DNA of 64,000 bases from Vitrella brassicaformis CCMP3155 (taxonomy: Eukaryota > Protista > Chromerida): positions 1 to 64,000 of the forward strand of contig CDMY01000370.1 of assembly GCA_001179505.1 (NCBI GenBank), in the 5' to 3' direction. Numbering within the stretch: position 1 is the first letter of the stretch; the number at the start of each line of letters is the position of its first letter. The notes below the pieces were generated by a model. The model was not told the origin of the DNA. It did not search any database and saw only the letters and a list, made by a program, of their open reading frames with translations. Of this stretch, positions 10,035 to 21,141 are shown piece by piece. The position numbers and the translations under genes are program-made.

Positions 10035-11395
10035 TGAGTCCATTGCACTAACGCGCAAACAGCGCCACTTATTCTCTCGCTCACGCCTTTCCTCCCTCAC
10101 ACGCCTTGGTCGCCTCCGCTTTGCTGGCCTCGGCGTAGGAAGCCCACAGCTGGTGCTGCCTCTGCTTTATCTGCCGCTTGAACTGGTGGGCGGCCGGGGG
10201 GCGGTGAGATGACCAAGCCAAACAATCGTTCGTCAACCTGGCAGACCGCTGCCTACCCATTGCGCATCCAGGGTCCTCTGCGGATGCGCATCTTCGCTAG
10301 CGGGACCATAGCAGCATTGTTCTGTGATCGTGCTTCTGGCCGGGACGCGCTAGTGGGTTGATGCACGCCGCCTCATTGTCCTGGCCGAGAGGGATGAATG
10401 GGATAATTATATGTTAAGGCGAGGTGGTAACGGACGGCGGGCAGCGCCGGCGCCAAGAAGGAGAAGCGCTTTGGGGCTTGTTGACCCTGGCCGCGAATTT
10501 TTAAGCGCGTTTACGTCACGCCGAGCTTGTTGGTGAAGGTTGTGATTTCGCGCGAGATCTAAGCGCCTGAGCCCTTCCAAAGGCCATCTGCAGCTGACCG
10601 CAGCCACCCGACCGGCGCATCTCTATCCACCCCTCCCTCTCTGCGCGCGTGGGCACCTCGTGAAGGCATCTGTGTGTGTGTGCGGTGATGTCGGGCAATG
10701 GCAAGGGCGGCCGCGGCAAGACCGCCGAGAAGACCAAGAAGGTCAGTGGGGAAGGCGTGGATGGATGGATGGACATCATTTGTGTGATGTGTGATGTGTG
10801 ATGTGTGATGTGGTGTGGTGTGATGTGGTGTGGTGTCCTGTTTGTTGGTTCTGCAGGTGCGTCAGGAGGTGCGTGCGGGTCTGCAGTTCCCCGTCGGCCG
10901 CATCGCCAAGTACCTCAAGAAGGGCCGCTACGCCAAGCGGGTGGCCAAGGGCGCCCCCATCTACATGGCCGCCGTGCTCGAGTATCTGTGTGCTGAGGTG
11001 TTGGAGCTCGCCGGCAATGCTGCCCGTGACCACAAGAAGGTCAGTGAGGGACAGAGAGGAGGGAGGGTGGGAGGGATGTGGGAGGGTGGTGGGAGGGGGA
11101 TGGGGGATGGGTGTGTGTGTGTGTGTGTGTGTGTCAGAGTCGCATCACGCCCCGCCACCTGATGTTGGCCATCAAGAACGACGAGGAGCTCGCCAAGTAC
11201 ACGAAGGACGTGACCATCTCCATGGGCGGCGTCATGCCCAACATCCACTCAGTCCTGCTGCCCAAGAAGTACACACCACACACCACACAGGGAGGTGGGA
11301 TGGCGGCCATCTGTGTGTGTGTGTGTGTGTGTGTGTGTGCTATCAGGTCTAAGGCCAAGAAGAATAAGGAGGCGGCGCCCAGCCAGGAGTACTGA
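10035..11395. repeat. Direct duplication of the H2A locus including upstream block (partner 3646..4820)
   Basis: 3646..3850 matches 10035..10246 without obvious indels; 3975..4160 matches 10555..10745; H2A intron positions are identical. Confidence 0.9.
10688..11395 (+). CDS. H2AX: Histone H2A.X-type variant, 4 exons, C-terminal SQEY
   Basis: [18 protein letters not shown]|[25 protein letters not shown]...DHKK|[44 protein letters not shown]|[15 protein letters not shown]; a terminal SQ(E/D)-hydrophobic motif defines H2A.X. Confidence 0.93.
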
Positions 11396-11537
11396 AGAAC
11401 CGACACAGACAGACAGACACAGACACACCGTAGAGACTGACAGACGACACCTACACGACACAACACGACACAACACACATACATGGACATGAGTAGGGTT
11501 TGGGGTAGATCTGTGTGTCGGCCGACCGGCTGACTTC

Positions 11538-15466: not shown

Positions 15467-16829
15467 CCACCAGCGTGTTGCTGCGTCCTGTCGATGGCGA
15501 GTGCGCAGTCAACCAGGGCACCATAACGGCCAGAAAGGCCAGAGTGACGCAACAAGAGATCCGGCTTTCCATGGCGGCCATAGGTCGGGAGGGCGGGCGA
15601 AGAGGGTCAGGATGCATCTGGCAGCATCTGGCGGTCCCCCTGTCACTCAACGCTCCATGTAATCGGGTCAGAATCACACGAGTTGTTCAATGGACTCGGC
15701 AACGAGTGGCAAGGAACGTTTCACGGACTTCTTTTGGAGGCCGACATGCAGCTCTGCAGCGGCAAACTGCGTGCGACTTTGCAATGACCTTTGCGTACGG
15801 TTAGATACACTCGCGTAGACACACACACGCTGAGACACACACACAAATCTTCGAGAGAGCCCGGCTTGTAACTCTCAGTACAGATGGGCTGGAGACATCT
15901 ACAGCAGTGCAAGTATCAGTACCTGCCTGTCTGCCTGCCTCCCTGTCTGCCGGTCCGCGGTTGGATGATCGAATGCAGCCGGCTGCACGGCATTGATCGA
16001 GCACAGGCACAAAATCGTCAACGAGTCCAGACCGCCAGCTCAAACACAAATGACGCAAGCGCACCACACCACACCACACGTAGGTACATTATCCAGTCAG
16101 TCCCCATAGCCATTCGTGCCACAGCCAACCATTCAGCCCATGTCTGGTGTCTGTCTTGTCTTCCATCGATAACCGGGCCTGCCTGCCTGCCTGCCTGTCT
16201 GTTTGGCTATGGATGTCTTTCTGATCCAGACGCAGCAGCCACCAAAGAAAGAACCCCGCACGAACCATGAATGAGTCATCCGTACAGTACATGCAGCGGC
16301 GGTCACTGGCTTGTTGGGGTGTGTTTGTGATTGATGTGGAAAGGCAAAAGAGGCAACGATGCAATGCCCGACATGTGCGTCGCCTGACCCCCCGTCCCGT
16401 CCGTGCCACACGCACTCCAAAACACACAAACATACTCAGCCGGCGCGCCGCAAGGGAGATCACCCGCAGCATTTCATGATGCGACCTGCACACACGCAGA
16501 GACGACATGCATCCCTGCAGCAATTTTCGTCCGTGCGTGCGGTTCTCTCACGACAGCCACGAGTGCGAACGGCTGGGGGGAAGATCTGAGCATCGCCGAC
16601 AAACAGACAGAGGGACACCAAGCCATACATGCAAGAGATTAGATTGATGCGGTCTGTCTCCATACCACGGGCGGATACCAACGGTAGGTGATCGAAACCT
16701 TGCTCACCCTCTGACAGACACAGGCGTACACACCGATGGATGGATGGATGGATGGACAGACGGCTGATCCCCTTCCTCTCGACCAGCCACTCACTCAGTC
16801 ACTCACTCACTCACTCACTCACTCACCAC

Positions 16830-17640
16830 ACTGAGTTTGCGACCAGGCGACCATCCCAGGGCCTTGACCACTTGCGACTGCGACTGCTCCTGCACAGCAC
16901 ACAACAAGCGACACCCACATCTCCCGCCTCCCTCACACATGCATGCATGCATATGCGGATGGGTGCAGTGCACACTGACCTCTGCGGTCGGTTGCTCATC
17001 CTCCTCCTGTATGACCCCCAGGGCCTGCAGCTCAACACCATTGACGCCACCGGCCACACGGTGATGTTGCATGTCGCTGGTGTCGTCGTTATTGGCGTTG
17101 TTGTCGTGGTTGTTCGCGACCTCTCCCTCTCCCTCGGTCACCCCCGTGGACAGCTGACGGATGTCCGGCCGGGGCTGTCGCACTTTTACCACGGTGCCCT
17201 TCTCATCCTCTGCACTCACACACACAGACACAGCAGGATACATTGAATGAACGCACTCATGTCGTGAGGACTGTGAGTACACACCTTTCCCTTTGATTTG
17301 GTACAAAGCCGGTCCCAGCTTTCGCTCCTTCTCGCGCCACGCCCGGATGGCAGCAGTCAGTGCTGCATCGACACGCAAACCGTCACAGTCAGGCCTCTCA
17401 CACACACACGAATGCAATGCGTACCTGCCTCCTTGTCTGCTGCGATGTGTGGCTCGGTCTCCAGCGCCTTTGTGAGCTCTGGAGACACATAGAACACCAC
17501 ACATGTGACAGGCATGTGACAGGCAGGTGGCGAGGCACATCAGCCCACACTCATCCATTCGCGCCTTTCTGGTGCTTTTCGATGGCCTGCTCTCGAAGGC
17601 AGTGCTCGAGGGCTGCATCAACACACATACACACACGCGC
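16830..17640 (-). CDS. Coding-like exons of unknown affiliation (possible C-terminal extension of the MAT-like gene, or a separate gene)
   Basis: Blocks MQPSSTAFESRPSKSTRKARMD, PDCDGLRVDAALTAAIRAWREKERKLGPALYQIKGKG and AEDEKGTVVKVRQPRPDIRQ...EQPTAE separated by repeat-rich intron-like DNA. Confidence 0.4.
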
Positions 17641-17742
17641 ACACACACACACACACGTGAGGCACTACACGCCCATGCCTCTGACTGACACACCTTCTGT
17701 GGACGACTTGAACTGGGAGGTTCGCACATTGCCGCACTTCTT

Positions 17743-19437
17743 TCACCCCAGCGGGCCACAAAATAACTCCAATACACGGAGCCACCAGGCAAATGGCGTA
17801 CTGAGATCCACACAGCAACGGATGCATGTAGCTGCTGTGCTGTGTGCGTGTGTGTCAGGGCTGTCTTCCTCTGTCTCCCTCTGTGTGTGCCCGAGTCTGT
17901 GTGCATGTGTGTGTGTGTGTGCGTGTGTGTGTGAGAGGGGGGGAGGGGGACGTACCTCTGTGGGCGCGGGATGATCTTGGCGACCTCCCAACGAACCACA
18001 TCTCCCGCTGCCCCAGACTAAACGAGGCACACAGGCAATGAGAAACCACACATGCATTTGTGTGTGTGTGTGGGTGGGTGGGTGCAGGTGGTGACCTTGA
18101 ATGTAGAGTTTAGCCCGCCGATGTCGAAGTTGAACTCGGCGTTGACGATCTTGAGCAATTTCTCGTCATTGATGCCCTTTGCCGCCGTGCCCCGCGTGTC
18201 GACAGACACATCCCAGAGGCCACCATCGCTGTAGGGAGGCCGGAGAGGCGGATATGTCACCTGAAGGGACCAGACACACATACACAGATGAGCAAAGCAA
18301 TTTCTCTCCAGGTGTGTGGCGTGACCTTGATGAGGCACTCTCGACAAAGTCCGCTGTCAACCAGGGAGAGTGCCACCCACCGAGCTGCAAGTCCAGCGAC
18401 CCGGGCAACCTAACCGATCAACGACGCACAAGGACAAGGTCAGCAGATGGTCAGAAGGACGGCAGGCAGGCTGTCGCTCGGACTTACGTGAAGACCGCCG
18501 TGGATGTGCATCCGACCGTACTGGGCGTCCCACTCGCCGAACAACTCCACTGTTATGCGACCTGGTCGCGTAAAAAGACCATTTTGCCCTCCATTCATTC
18601 CTCCTGGTTCTTTGTCTGACGCCCCACTCACGTCCGGCAATTGCGACGAGCATCTGTGCCCCCCTGCACAAGATTGTAGTGGATGTGCAGGTCCTGTTGT
18701 TGATGATGGGCTTGATGACGAAGTCCTCGACGTCCTTGTACAGCGTCTCAGAGAGAGAGTCCGGGATGACTCGTCGCGCGACGGCGAGGATATGGTGGAC
18801 GTGGCGGCCGTGGTCGTCCTCCATGGCGACGAATGTCTTCGCGACTCCCGGGTACAGGTACGGCAATTGGCCTGAAAGACATCCCAGCGCAGAGGGGATG
18901 TCATGTAGTGCTATGTGCGAGTGTACCTCACGTCTCATTACCGGTTTTGACTTTCTCGAGCACGTTTCGCAGCGTGTGGACGATGTCTTTGGTGCCCGGC
19001 ATGTGTTGGGGGGGGTCGTTGCCCGCGAAGCCGACAATGACTGCACACACACACACACACACACACGCAAGACATCCACGCAACCGTCATCCCTCCCTGC
19101 ACCGGCCCCTCTCATGTCCGACCTAGTTCATCCGCAGCCTTGACCAGGGTCGGTGGAAGGCCAGCAATGGCGTTCACGTCCACATCACTGTTGGTGAGGA
19201 TCTCCCAGAAGGCCACCAGGTTGCTGGACCGCCCTGCAGACGACACAGAAGGAGAGAATGGGTGTCGGTGGATCATGCACCCGGCAGCCTTTGTTGTCCG
19301 TCGTGCTTACCCGGCTGGTGGACCTTGACGCTCAGCACCTTGGTGTCCTTGTCCTTCTTGATGCACTCGTCGATGACTCTCTCCACCACGCACAGCCCGG
19401 GGAGGCCGGTGGACCGGATCAGGCTGGTGATGTCCAT
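17743..19437 (-). CDS. Highly divergent S-adenosylmethionine synthetase (MAT/MetK) homologue lacking catalytic motifs; ~8-9 exons
   Basis: Spliced exons align colinearly by eye with eukaryotic MAT: GLPGLCVVERVIDECIKKDKDTKV, VIVGFAGNDPPQHMPGT..VHTL, GQLPYLYPGVAKTFV, VIKPII, IAGRRITVELFG, VARVAGLAARWVALSLVDSGLCRECLIKVTY, SVDTRGT..NDEKLLKIVNAEFNF, VRWEVAK. Confidence 0.85.
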
Positions 19438-19669
19438 GGCCTGATGATGGATGAAAGAGAGATGCCAAGGACGACGGGATGGATGAGGGGGGTGAGCACT
19501 AGAGAGGGAAGATGCGGGCGCTCCGTGGGGATGCGTCCACGAGAGATGCCGAGCAACGAAGGGGCCGAAGGTGATGACTCTCACAGTCGAAAGACACTCT
19601 CACAGTCGAAAGACGGATTTGGAGAAAGCGGAAGATCTGCTCAAGAGCTCGCAGATGAGGCTAGGGTAC

Positions 19670-21141
19670 CTTGTGAAACCGCTGTGCAGCAGAAGGTCGC
19701 CGAGTTCGTTGCTGACGTCCAGGCGCTCAGCGAAGCCGCGTCGCGCGTCCCCCAGGAGGCCCTGTACGCGGCGGCCAAGTCCCTGCAGGCCAAGTGGATC
19801 TACCTGCGTCGGGTCATGCACACCACCTGTGAGGACTTCGAGGTCCTCCGCGACACCATCACCGACACGTTCCTGCCCGCACTCGTCGGCACCCCACAGC
19901 CCCTCTCTGACGACATGAAGCGGCTGCTCCTTCGCCCTGTGCGCCACGGCGGCATCGGCCTTGTCGACCCGTCCTTCCGTGCTCCCCTTCCGGCCCCACT
20001 TGACGGGCAGACCGACCTCTGTCAGCTCACGCGCAAGGCCTCCCGGGCGGGCACCACCATCCTCGCCCACGCCATCGCCACCTCCGCCCCCCATTACCCC
20101 TCCGCAGCGCATCGCAGCCAGATGCACAGGGCCAGGAGAGTCTTCCGAGAGTCCCTCGATGAGACCTTCGCCCACGACTCGACAGCCATCATCGGCCGCC
20201 TCCCTCCCGGCCAGGCCAGGGCCGCAGAGCGTGCTCGCTGCAACGACACGGGGCAGTTCATGACTGTCCGCCCGTCCCAGCTGGACGACACCGACCTCAG
20301 TGCACTCGAGTTCCGTGACGCCATGTGCCACCGGTACGGCCTGCCCCACCAGGACATGTCAGACAAGTGCGACGGCGAGCGCCCGAATGGGGCGAGGTGC
20401 GGTGCCGACTTCACCGTCCAACACGCGCTTGGCTGCTCCCTGGGCGGGCTGGTGTACGCCAAACACGACCGGCTCAAGCACGAGGTCGGCGGCCTGTGTC
20501 AGCTGGGCGGACTCAAGGTGGCGTACGAGCACACGGTGTGGAAGGAGACCGCCCACGCCGCCGCCGCCCGCGACCCCCGTGCCGTTCCCTTGGGTGTGAC
20601 CCCCTGCGACGGTGCCGGCCACCCCCATCCCCCTCCCCCCCTCCCCTCGCCAACTCCCCCTCCCCCGCCCGACCCACCTGACCCTCCTGACCCGCCCGAC
20701 CCACACACTGCGCCCGACGAGCCTGATGGTGTCCCCAACGACCCCACCGTCCGCACGGACCTGTTCGTGTCGAGGTTTTGGCCAAGCGGCCGCGAGCTGT
20801 CGATCGATTTCTGCGTGACCGACGCTGACACTCGCTGCAACCAGGGCAAGACCACCGGCACGATCACCCGCGAGAGAGAGAAGCTCAAGAAGGACCACCA
20901 TATTGACGTGTGTCGGCTCAACCGCATGGACTTCACGGCATTCATCGTGACGTGTGACGGCGTCTATGGGAGGGAGGCCGATTGCTTCATTCGCCGCTTG
21001 GCCGAGCTCATCAACAAGAGGGGCGGATGGGACAGATATGGTGTTGGCCGGGTCGAGCAATGGATTCGGGCGCCGCTGTCAGTGTGCCTGGCTTGTTCGG
21101 TGTCTGCGTGTCTGCGGCGGCCCAGGAGGAAGGGCCGGTAG
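19670..21141 (+). mobile_element. 5'-truncated non-LTR retrotransposon (CRE-like, restriction-like endonuclease type): post-RT/thumb region, CCHC knuckle and RLE
   Basis: Intronless open frame: QKVAEFVADVQALS...PQEALYAAAKSLQAKWIYLRR; CDG..C...HALGC...KHDRLKHEV; RTDLFV..DFCVTD..REKLKKDHH..C..FTAFIVTCDGVYGREADCFIRRLA; RT catalytic YxDD core absent; boundaries approximate. Confidence 0.85.

What the first reader, a model, noticed from the sequence alone, without database searches (positions are those of the whole stretch)
17743..19437. Probable pseudoenzyme of S-adenosylmethionine synthetase (MAT) with a dismantled active site
Seen: the exons follow MAT order through all three domains and keep structural residues (e.g. 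AARWVALSLVDSGLCRECLIKVTY vs human AARWVAKSLVKGGLCRRVLVQVSY; LPYLYPGVAKT vs LPWLRPDSKT). Catalytic signatures are replaced: GHPDK to GLPGL, ACE to LSV, GAGDQG to AADELV with the preceding gating-loop region largely deleted, DSK to VAK, GRF and PQGD absent, GRK to GRR, and GGGAFSGKD..KVD to GRMHIHGGLHVA. Established: these motifs supply the His, Asp and Lys residues that bind ATP, Met, Mg2+ and K+ in MetK/MAT; MATs are obligate oligomers; even the divergent MATX clade keeps these motifs, and the mammalian regulator MAT2B has an unrelated fold. Inference: intact splice sites, GC3-rich codons and heavy but fold-preserving divergence suggest a maintained non-catalytic MAT that might be a regulatory or dominant-negative subunit, a scaffold or a ligand sensor. 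I know of no described example, but could not search. Caveat: see the exon 1/2 junction finding.
Basis: partly seen in the sequence, partly recalled or inferred. Interest (0 to 1): 0.8.

Follow-up and report, generated by a model that had tools for sequence, protein, structure and literature searches.

The report
Dead SAM-synthetase-like gene in Vitrella
The alga-like protist Vitrella brassicaformis transcribes and correctly splices a gene for a shortened, very diverged copy of the enzyme that makes S-adenosylmethionine; the copy has lost almost every catalytic residue, so it cannot be the enzyme, and whether it is a working non-catalytic protein or a decaying relic is still open.

Summary
On the minus strand, nine GT-AG exons (19437..17743) encode a 339-aa protein. 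It is identical to a public transcript ORF (P0001). It forms the first 328 residues of the GenBank model CEM06745.1 of Vitrella brassicaformis.

- **Family:** it is a significant S-adenosylmethionine synthetase (MAT) homologue (Pfam M and C domains above threshold; profile comparison E 1.6e-25; structural Z 18).
- **Active site:** it keeps only 35 of 102 highly conserved MAT positions. The His/Asp/Lys of GHPDK, the PxGD Asp and the GGGAFSGKD..KVD residues are gone, and about 50 residues including the gating loop are missing.
- **Expression:** spliced transcripts from at least three studies confirm every intron.
- **Constraint:** the frame has no stop over a branch of about 3.75 substitutions per site, so it was kept as a protein.

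Several results weaken the "maintained regulator" reading:
- No close full-length relative (orthologue) turned up among 1.84 billion representatives.
- The only close kin is a 450-nt duplicate of exons 1-2 in a RING gene, with dN/dS about 1.1.
- The mRNA continues past the TGA through eight more introns, and a 208-codon ORF follows in the same frame.
- The public 527-aa model skips the TGA with a 63-nt intron that no transcript shows.

The scan's first readers noted other degenerate MAT remnants elsewhere in this genome; I did not check them.

Verdict: a real, non-catalytic MAT derivative whose function is unproven.

The parts
19438..19621 (-). 5' UTR of the mRNA, as far as the transcripts reach
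   Evidence: L001 and the X1 contig start at 19621; an X8 contig ends in adapter sequence at 19460.
19311..19437 (-). Exon 1, with the ATG at 19437. MAT N-terminal region; GHPDK is replaced by GLPG-L.
   Evidence: the joint 19232/19310 is seen in X1, X7 and X8.
19123..19233 (-). Exon 2. It ends at KAADEL, the GAGDQG position. About 50 residues, including the gating loop, are missing upstream of that position.
18942..19040 (-). Exon 3, start of the central domain.
   Evidence: Pfam S-AdoMet_synt_M on the exon alone, E 0.036.
18632..18871 (-). Exon 4. PDGK becomes PGVAK; NPSGRF is deleted; PxGD..GRK becomes AQML..GRR.
   Evidence: the flanking joints are seen.
18488..18561 (-). Exon 5. GGGAFSGKD is replaced by YGRMHIHGG.
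   Evidence: joints.
18326..18409 (-). Exon 6, the best conserved MAT helix (AARWVA.SLV..GLC).
   Evidence: Pfam C domain E 2.5e-4 and PDB MAT1A/MAT2A E about 5e-4 on the exon alone.
18096..18260 (-). Exon 7, C-terminal domain.
17956..18017 (-). Exon 8, the end of MAT homology (the W-E motif).
   Evidence: a 62-nt piece in X1 record 1, by arithmetic on the record positions.
17694..17800 (-). Exon 9. It holds a 19-residue non-MAT tail, the stop TGA at 17745-17743, and then 49 more nt that stay open in the same frame.
   Evidence: Contiguous in L001, L005, X1 and X7.
17716..17778 (-). A 63-nt GT..AG segment that the public 527-aa model (CEM06745.1) removes as an intron, which skips the TGA.
   Evidence: Deduced from the sequence of P0157. 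It is retained in every transcript or contig seen.
16460..17612 (-). Eight further exons: 17612-17565, 17478-17425, 17362-17285, 17209-16980, 16889-16827, 16710-16666, 16585-16552 and 16485 onward. They carry a 208-codon ORF in frame with the MAT-like ORF, with its stop at 16462-16460. The intron 17564-17479 is GC-AG and is sometimes retained.
   Evidence: Exact mapping of L005; joints; the ORF has 0 stops against 6.9 expected; codon-like GC periodicity.
15714..16459 (-). 3' UTR. No SECIS element was found.
   Evidence: L001 ends at 15714; Rfam scans.

Best explanation
This is a transcribed, correctly spliced nuclear gene of Vitrella brassicaformis. Its first nine exons encode a 339-aa, lineage-specific and extremely diverged derivative of a eukaryotic (alveolate-type) S-adenosylmethionine synthetase.

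Shown:
- It keeps the MAT domain order and, in a model, about 240 residues of the MAT fold.
- It lacks the residues that bind the triphosphate, Mg2+/K+ and methionine, and it lacks the gating loop. It therefore cannot make SAM.
- The reading frame was kept open through a very long divergence, so it has been a translated protein.

Inferred:
- It works, if it still works, by binding rather than catalysis, as a MAT-fold interaction module.
- MAT active sites are built from both subunits of a dimer. The most specific guess is therefore that it pairs with itself or with the canonical MAT. A mixed dimer would have crippled sites, making it a 'poison' or regulatory subunit.
- It may originally have been the N-terminal domain of a 548-codon ORF that now carries one in-frame TGA.
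For: - **Homology:** (metK TIGR01034 scores 74 bits against an equivalog cut-off of 309, so it is related but not an equivalent enzyme).
- **Lost residues:** it keeps 35 of 102 columns that are at least 90% conserved, and 17 of 36 invariant columns. H28, D30, K31, E56, D178, D257, K264, D268, K284, D285, K288 and D290 (numbering of the canonical MAT P0009) are replaced or deleted.
- **Fold:** the AF2 model built with an alignment has pLDDT 70.9 and pTM 0.63. All Foldseek top hits are MATs, with E 1e-19 to 1e-17 and TM 0.5-0.58. VIA-align gives Z about 18 and rmsd 3.8 A over 232-242 residues.
- **Expression and splicing:** spliced contigs in X1, X7 and X8 from three studies, with depths of 12, 42 and 133. 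The transcripts L001 and L005 come from two further assemblies.
- **Constraint on the frame:** 0 stops against 10.9 expected, with 0 of 2000 shuffles reaching zero. GC3 is 0.76 against about 0.55 in the introns. The terminal branch is 3.75 substitutions per site.
- **Indels since the duplication:** the two introns carry two indels in 149 aligned nt and the paralogous exon copy carries a frameshift. The 1020-nt ORF here has none.
- **Dimer-shared active sites in MAT:** PMC3923989.
Against: - No close full-length relative was found among 1.84 billion representatives. Everything beyond the self-hit and a 72-residue paralogous piece is at most about 34% identical over the full-length matches, so conservation between species cannot be shown.
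- Exons 1-2 compared with their duplicate give dN/dS 1.12 over 61 codons, and the exons are more diverged than the introns.
- The stop codon lies 49 nt before an exon junction and upstream of eight introns, an architecture typical of nonsense-mediated decay (NMD) targets or of a truncated longer ORF.
- A 50-residue deletion removes part of one structural domain. The former active-site segment (residues 185-215) is modelled with pLDDT below 50, so the dimer face is heavily altered.
- The model leans on an alignment of canonical MATs.
- No canonical Vitrella MAT was retrieved here, and no interaction was tested.
Confidence: 0.5

Rival explanations
1. It is a relic in early decay. A formerly longer gene (MAT-like domain plus a 208-codon tail) suffered a TGA nonsense change. 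It is still transcribed but no longer under selection, and the 339-aa product is functionless.
For: - An in-frame 208-codon ORF follows the TGA, crosses eight introns and shows coding-like GC periodicity.
- In the fully spliced form, that ORF has no ATG within about its first 125 codons.
- dN/dS is 1.12 for exons 1-2.
- No orthologue was found.
- The 18-codon tail before the TGA lacks codon periodicity.
Against: - There is no frameshift or stop in the 339 codons.
- The transcripts are as deep as those of neighbouring regions.
- The TGA is the same in all samples seen, though these may be one isolate.
- The dN/dS value rests on 26 differences and cannot say which copy changed.
Confidence: 0.25
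2. The real product is the long protein of about 527-548 aa. The TGA would be bypassed by rare splicing of the 63-nt segment 17778-17716 or by stop-codon readthrough, and the MAT-like part would be the N-terminal domain of a coiled-coil/acidic protein ending in CCG.
For: - The two ORFs share a frame, and the downstream one is too long to be open by chance (P about 0.001).
- The 63-nt segment has GT..AG ends, a length divisible by three, and a size typical of this gene's introns, which run from 62 to 155 nt.
- The public annotation uses it.
Against: - All five transcript assemblies or contigs that cover the site retain the segment: L001, L005, X1, X7 and the two MMETSP (marine microbial eukaryote transcriptome project) isoforms.
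- In X7 the retained form has the same depth as the upstream exons, 44 against 42.
- UGA followed by A is not a known leaky context (my own knowledge).
- Gene predictors often invent such introns to skip stops.
- Contigs can hide rare variants.
Confidence: 0.15
3. The TGA encodes selenocysteine, read as G-U-K-K-C (a UxxC redox motif), which would make a long selenoprotein.
For: - Other agents of this scan report selenoproteins in Vitrella.
- A UxxC-like context follows the TGA.
Against: No SECIS-like match was found at E up to 5-10 in the genomic 3' region or in the spliced mRNA.
Confidence: 0.03
4. It is still an enzyme, with altered chemistry on the MAT scaffold.
For: It keeps the Asp of GAGDQG, the Lys of PDGK and the Arg of GRK.
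Against: At least twelve ligand or metal-binding positions are replaced by non-equivalent residues, the gating loop is deleted, and the former active-site loops are modelled as disordered.
Confidence: 0.03

Closest known systems
Canonical eukaryotic S-adenosylmethionine synthetase (MAT/MetK, EC 2.5.1.6; for example rat MAT1A 1o90, Cryptosporidium MAT 6c07)
   Same: Same domain order, Pfam M and C domains above threshold, the conserved AARWVA.SLV..GLC helix, and a predicted fold with Z about 18. In the tree it sits with alveolate-type MATs.
   Different: It is 339 aa rather than about 395, with 31-34% identity at best. The catalytic His/Asp/Lys/Glu residues are lost, the gating loop and the NPSGRF segment are deleted, and it scores 74 bits against the 309-bit equivalog cut-off.
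Degenerate MAT paralogues of dinoflagellate type (for example Symbiodinium necroappetens CAE7170948.1 'SAMS2', P0027; also P0012, P0161, P0038, P0020)
   Same: They are MAT paralogues with several catalytic positions replaced: Lys of PDGK to Arg or Ala, Lys of GRK to Arg or Ala, and Asp of KVD to Ala, Glu, Cys or Gly.
   Different: They are full length, nearly all keep GHPDK (P0027 has GHFDK), retain 55-89 of 102 conserved columns, and form their own clade. The Vitrella protein is no closer to them (24-28% identity) than to canonical MATs and is far more eroded.
Trypanosomatid AdoMetDC prozyme (a catalytically dead paralogue that partners the active enzyme)
   Same: It is a dead paralogue of an oligomeric enzyme of SAM/polyamine metabolism (PMC6221367, abstract seen). 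It is the model for how a dead MAT subunit could act.
   Different: The prozyme is conserved across trypanosomatids and shown to heterodimerise and activate. Here there is no orthologue and no interaction data, and a dead MAT partner would be expected to inhibit rather than activate.
MATX paralogue of MAT
   Same: It is a divergent eukaryotic MAT paralogue with a patchy distribution (PMC3923989).
   Different: MATX is the working enzyme in the organisms that have it. The Vitrella protein lacks the catalytic motifs, so it is not a MATX.

Membership tests
S-adenosylmethionine synthetase superfamily (homology) | Significant profile match to the MAT domains in N-M-C order | tested here: met
   Pfam M scores 34.2 bits against a cut-off of 29, and Pfam C scores 41.8 against 25. 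hhalign gives E 1.6e-25 over residues 8-296. The Pfam N domain does not score.
S-adenosylmethionine synthetase superfamily (homology) | MAT three-domain alpha/beta fold | tested here: met
   The AF2 model has pLDDT 70.9. All top PDB hits are MATs, with Z about 18 and 232-242 residues aligned. Caveat: the model was built from a MAT alignment, and about 30% of it has low confidence.
Functional MAT enzyme (metK equivalog) | GHPDK motif (His, Asp and Lys for triphosphate and Mg2+) | tested here: not met
   The motif reads GLPG-L: H becomes L, D becomes G and K is deleted.
Functional MAT enzyme (metK equivalog) | Asp of GGPxGD, Lys of GRK, and Asp of DTYGG | tested here: not met
   D257 becomes L, K264 becomes R and D268 becomes E.
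Functional MAT enzyme (metK equivalog) | GGGAFSGKD..KVD phosphate-binding loop | tested here: not met
   It reads YGRMHIHGG..HVA: K284 becomes H, D285 becomes G, K288 becomes H and D290 becomes A.
Functional MAT enzyme (metK equivalog) | Score above the equivalog cut-off of TIGR01034 | tested here: not met
   74.4 bits against a cut-off of 309.4. The canonical control P0009 scores 544.
Functional MAT enzyme (metK equivalog) | SAM synthesis in vitro | not testable with these tools
   This needs a bench assay.
Maintained pseudoenzyme (prozyme-like regulatory paralogue) | Loss of catalytic residues with the ORF and expression retained | tested here: met
Maintained pseudoenzyme (prozyme-like regulatory paralogue) | Orthologues under purifying selection | tested here: not met
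   No close full-length relative was found in 1.84 billion representatives. The only paralogous piece gives dN/dS 1.12.
Maintained pseudoenzyme (prozyme-like regulatory paralogue) | Physical association with the active paralogue | not testable with these tools
   No multimer prediction or interaction data were available, and the canonical Vitrella MAT was not retrieved.
Plain (unitary or duplicated) pseudogene | Frameshifts or stops inside the homologous region, with no spliced transcript | tested here: not met
   There are 0 stops or frameshifts in 339 codons, and spliced transcripts occur in at least three studies.
Eukaryotic selenoprotein | In-frame UGA plus a SECIS element in the 3' UTR | tested here: not met
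   The UGA is present, but Rfam finds no SECIS in the genomic or the spliced sequence.

The most novel reading that the evidence does not exclude
A MAT-fold pseudoenzyme has not been described for this otherwise ultra-conserved enzyme. In this reading, Vitrella maintains it as a non-catalytic subunit that pairs with the canonical MAT across the shared dimer active sites and so throttles SAM synthesis. It might be produced in two forms (339 aa and about 527-548 aa) by regulated bypass of an in-frame UGA. It would belong to a wider, unrecognised radiation of MAT-derived non-catalytic domains in chromerids and dinoflagellates.
Probability: 0.12. Interest if true: 0.75.

Novelty: new variant of a known kind. 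Interest (0 to 1): 0.45.

Why it matters
MAT is one of the most conserved enzymes known, and its only described regulatory partner (mammalian MAT2B) has an unrelated fold. A dead MAT paralogue kept as a protein would be a new way to regulate SAM supply. Because MAT active sites are shared between subunits, it would also be a natural dominant-negative design.

Two practical points follow:
- The public Vitrella model for this gene (527 aa) rests on an intron that no transcript supports.
- MAT-derived degenerate paralogues also occur in dinoflagellate-type data, which gives a comparative set to test whether such proteins are functional.

Tried and rejected
- **Per-exon Pfam scans** gave only two weak hits, and a single-exon PDB search was only marginally significant.
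- **The spliced protein** had no reference, so I did not type it into any tool. I reached it by querying the 252-aa stop-free ORF 18360-19115 restricted to its exon-4 part, which returned the stored 339-aa ORF P0001.
- **Single-sequence AF2** failed, with pLDDT 35.6. The second job, with a 50-row alignment, was used instead.
- **The word-index search** with P0001 found only canonical MATs.
- **Selenocysteine** is rejected for lack of a SECIS. A strong hairpin at about 16460-16563 looked at is a branched structure, not SECIS-like.
- **A separate downstream gene** starting at the ATG at 17515 inside the retained GC-AG intron (157/188-aa ORFs P0160 and P0158) is possible. It does not explain the open, codon-like 32 codons between the TGA and that point, so I kept it as part of the rivals rather than as the main reading.
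- **Membership in the dinoflagellate-type degenerate clade** is not supported by the tree. The 3.75 branch makes any placement unsure.
- **Other MAT remnants in the window:** none found by tblastn.
- **Not done:**
  - retrieval of the canonical Vitrella MAT;
  - verification of the two other first-reader notes on MAT remnants;
Full report
**What is in the sequence.**
- The window is GC-rich (about 58%) eukaryotic DNA with short introns and many (CA)n tracts.
- On the minus strand I built a nine-exon model from 19437 to 17743. All its introns are GT-AG and 65-155 nt long. The CDS is 1020 nt and the product 339 aa.
- GC by codon position is 0.61/0.42/0.76, against 0.51-0.61 in the introns.
- The coding frame has no stop. 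The other two frames have 7 and 5, and mononucleotide shuffles give 10.9 on average, with none of 2000 reaching zero.

**Organism and public records.**
- A search restricted to exon 4 returned a stored 339-aa ORF, P0001. It is identical to my model and comes from an MMETSP (marine microbial eukaryote transcriptome project) transcript and a JGI re-assembly.
- Its 90% cluster also holds CEM06745.1 / UniProt A0A0G4F405, an 'uncharacterized protein' of 527 aa from Vitrella brassicaformis CCMP3155, contig CDMY01000370.1.
- The gene is therefore already catalogued, but it is not described as a MAT derivative in anything I could search.

**Transcription and splicing.**
- Contigs of runs X1, X7 and X8 (three studies) lie on the locus in spliced form. 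Joints appear at introns 1, 3, 4, 5 and 6, and record arithmetic accounts for introns 2, 7 and 8.
- The 2925-nt transcript L001 maps exactly and confirms all eight introns of the CDS.
- Unspliced fragments are minor. One example has depth 3.4 against 133.

**Homology to MAT.**
- Single exons score weakly.
- The whole protein passes the Pfam gathering thresholds for the central domain (E 3.1e-8) and the C-terminal domain (E 1.3e-10) of S-adenosylmethionine synthetase.
- It matches rat MAT1A at E 5.6e-15.
- It aligns to a profile of 20 canonical MATs with probability 99.7% and E 1.6e-25 over residues 8-296, including the N-terminal region.
- It scores 74 bits on the metK equivalog model, whose cut-off is 309. 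A canonical control scores 544.

**Active site.**
- Of 102 columns that are at least 90% conserved in canonical MATs it keeps 35, and of 36 invariant columns it keeps 17.
- Replaced or deleted are:
  - the His, Asp and Lys of GHPDK;
  - the conserved Glu of the ACE motif;
  - the Asp of PDGK;
  - the Asp of GGPxGD;
  - the Lys of GRK (now Arg);
  - the Asp of DTYGG (now Glu);
  - the Lys and Asp of GGGAFSGKD;
  - the Lys and Asp of KVD.
- About 50 residues before the GAGDQG position (the gating loop and the elements before it), the NPSGRF segment and part of the C-terminal loop are missing.
- The Asp of GAGDQG, the Lys of PDGK and the Arg of GRK are kept.
- From established knowledge of MetK/MAT catalysis (my own knowledge, not tested here), the lost residues hold the triphosphate, the metals and methionine. 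SAM synthesis is therefore excluded for practical purposes.

**Fold.**
- A single-sequence AF2 model failed, with pLDDT 35.6.
- With a 50-row alignment the model reaches pLDDT 70.9 and pTM 0.63. Confidence is low at residues 1-16, 37-51, 69-75, 185-215 (the former active-site loops) and 302-306.
- Foldseek returns only MATs, with E 1e-19 to 1e-17 and TM 0.5-0.58.
- VIA-align gives Z about 18 and rmsd 3.8 A over 232-242 of about 370-380 residues.
- The fold is therefore largely MAT-like. The model leans on a MAT alignment, however, and one structural unit is deleted.

**Relatives.**
- The exhaustive phmmer search over 1.84 billion representatives gives 198 hits, with no close full-length relative. 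The best full-length hits are canonical MATs at about 31-34% identity.
- In a tree the protein has a terminal branch of 3.75 substitutions per site, against a median of 0.71. It sits unresolved with alveolate-type MATs (an environmental sequence and Selenidium) next to, but not inside, a clade of partly degenerate MAT paralogues.
- One member of that clade is Symbiodinium necroappetens 'SAMS2'. Its members keep 55-89 of the 102 conserved columns.
- The one close relative is P0008, the Vitrella RING-finger protein CEM12040.1. It shares 64% identity with residues 1-72.
- At the DNA level, 450 nt are duplicated at 84% identity on another contig: the 5' UTR, exon 1, intron 1, exon 2 and most of intron 2.
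- In that pair the exons differ by 13-17% and the introns by only 4-6.5% (Fisher p 0.003). dN/dS is 1.12 over the 61 codons before a 1-nt deletion in the RING copy.
- This shows a recent partial duplication that made a chimeric gene. It gives no sign of purifying selection on the N-terminal remnant, but the sample is small and the two lineages cannot be separated.

**Beyond the stop codon.**
- The mRNA does not end near the TGA (17745-17743). Transcripts L001 and L005 and the contigs continue through eight more introns to about 15714. One of these, 17564-17479, is GC-AG and is sometimes retained.
- In the fully spliced form the frame of the MAT-like ORF stays open for 208 further codons, ending in ...KCCG. 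The other frames have 7 and 4 stops, and the chance of zero stops in shuffles is 0.001. It shows codon-like GC periodicity.
- Its first in-frame ATG lies about 125 codons in.
- The public 527-aa model joins the two ORFs by removing a 63-nt GT..AG segment (17778-17716) that contains the TGA. Every transcript or contig covering the site retains that segment, and in X7 the retained form is as deep as the upstream exons.
- No SECIS element was found in the genomic DNA or in the spliced mRNA.
- The simplest reading is one former 548-codon ORF now interrupted by a single TGA. Rare splicing or readthrough cannot be excluded from contigs alone.
- An ATG at 17515 inside the retained intron could also start a separate 157/188-aa product.

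**Weighing the readings.**
- Against a plain pseudogene: the ORF is intact over a very long branch, codon structure is kept, expression is steady, and there are no indels since the duplication although the neighbouring introns and the paralogous copy carry them.
- Against a securely maintained regulator: there is no orthologue, dN/dS is about 1 in the one comparison possible, the dimer face is heavily altered, and the stop sits upstream of eight introns.
- My estimates:
  - about 0.5 that it is a non-catalytic MAT-fold protein still in use (binding or oligomerisation, possibly with canonical MAT);
  - about 0.25 that it is a relic in early decay;
  - about 0.15 that the functional product is the long form.
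- The last reading is compatible with the first.

**Other notes of this scan.**
- Two first-reader notes (s1-227014 and s1-212163) report other degenerate MAT-derived domains in chimeric genes elsewhere in this genome. I could not reach those sequences and did not verify them.
- The RING-gene duplicate found here is an independent example of the same tendency.
- Notes on Vitrella selenoproteins (for example s1-205469) prompted the SECIS check, which was negative.

Noticed in passing
window 17743-17745 and 16460-17742 (minus strand): A single in-frame TGA separates the MAT-like ORF from a 208-codon ORF that spans eight further introns. The public model CEM06745.1 (527 aa) skips the TGA with a 63-nt intron (17778-17716) that none of the transcripts seen supports.
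   Followed up: partly
L004:6729-7160 (Vitrella contig CDMY01000431.1) against window 19492-19047: A 450-nt genomic duplicate of the 5' UTR, exon 1, intron 1, exon 2 and most of intron 2 forms the start of a RING-finger gene (CEM12040.1). The exons are two to three times more diverged than the introns, dN/dS is about 1.1, and a 1-nt deletion shifts the frame in the copy.
   Followed up: yes
proteins P0012, P0161, P0038, P0020, P0027, P0034, P0131, P0046: This is a clade of full-length MAT paralogues with partly degenerate catalytic motifs. Almost all keep GHPDK, but the Lys/Asp of PDGK, GRK and KVD are often replaced. One is Symbiodinium necroappetens CAE7170948.1 'SAMS2' and the others come from MMETSP or environmental transcriptomes. 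They are possible pseudoenzymes or neofunctionalised MATs of dinoflagellates.
   Followed up: partly
window 17479-17564 (minus strand): A GC-AG intron that is spliced in X1, X7, X8 and L005 but retained in L001 and in short contigs. An ATG at 17515 inside it opens a 157/188-aa ORF (P0160, P0158), which may mark a second transcription or translation start. Contig depth is higher downstream (104 against 42 in X7).
   Followed up: partly
window 19258-21141 (+ strand): A 627-aa ORF with a proline-rich PPDPPD tract starts inside the MAT-like gene's first exons and 5' UTR on the opposite strand. Another note of this scan (s1-235992) calls it a retrotransposon fragment that splits an AAA gene. An AAA-domain gene is also annotated within a few kb of both the MAT-like gene (L006) and its RING-gene duplicate (L004).
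   Followed up: no
window about 10830-11400 (+ strand): A histone H2A gene interrupted by introns that carry (GT)n tracts. The public annotation lists it as a 138-aa histone (L006 18043-18750).
   Followed up: no
window 17619-17665, 17893-17951, 18047-18091, 19041-19070: (CA)n/(GT)n microsatellites sit inside introns 2, 7, 8 and 9 of the gene. They caused read laying to drop some joints there.
   Followed up: no
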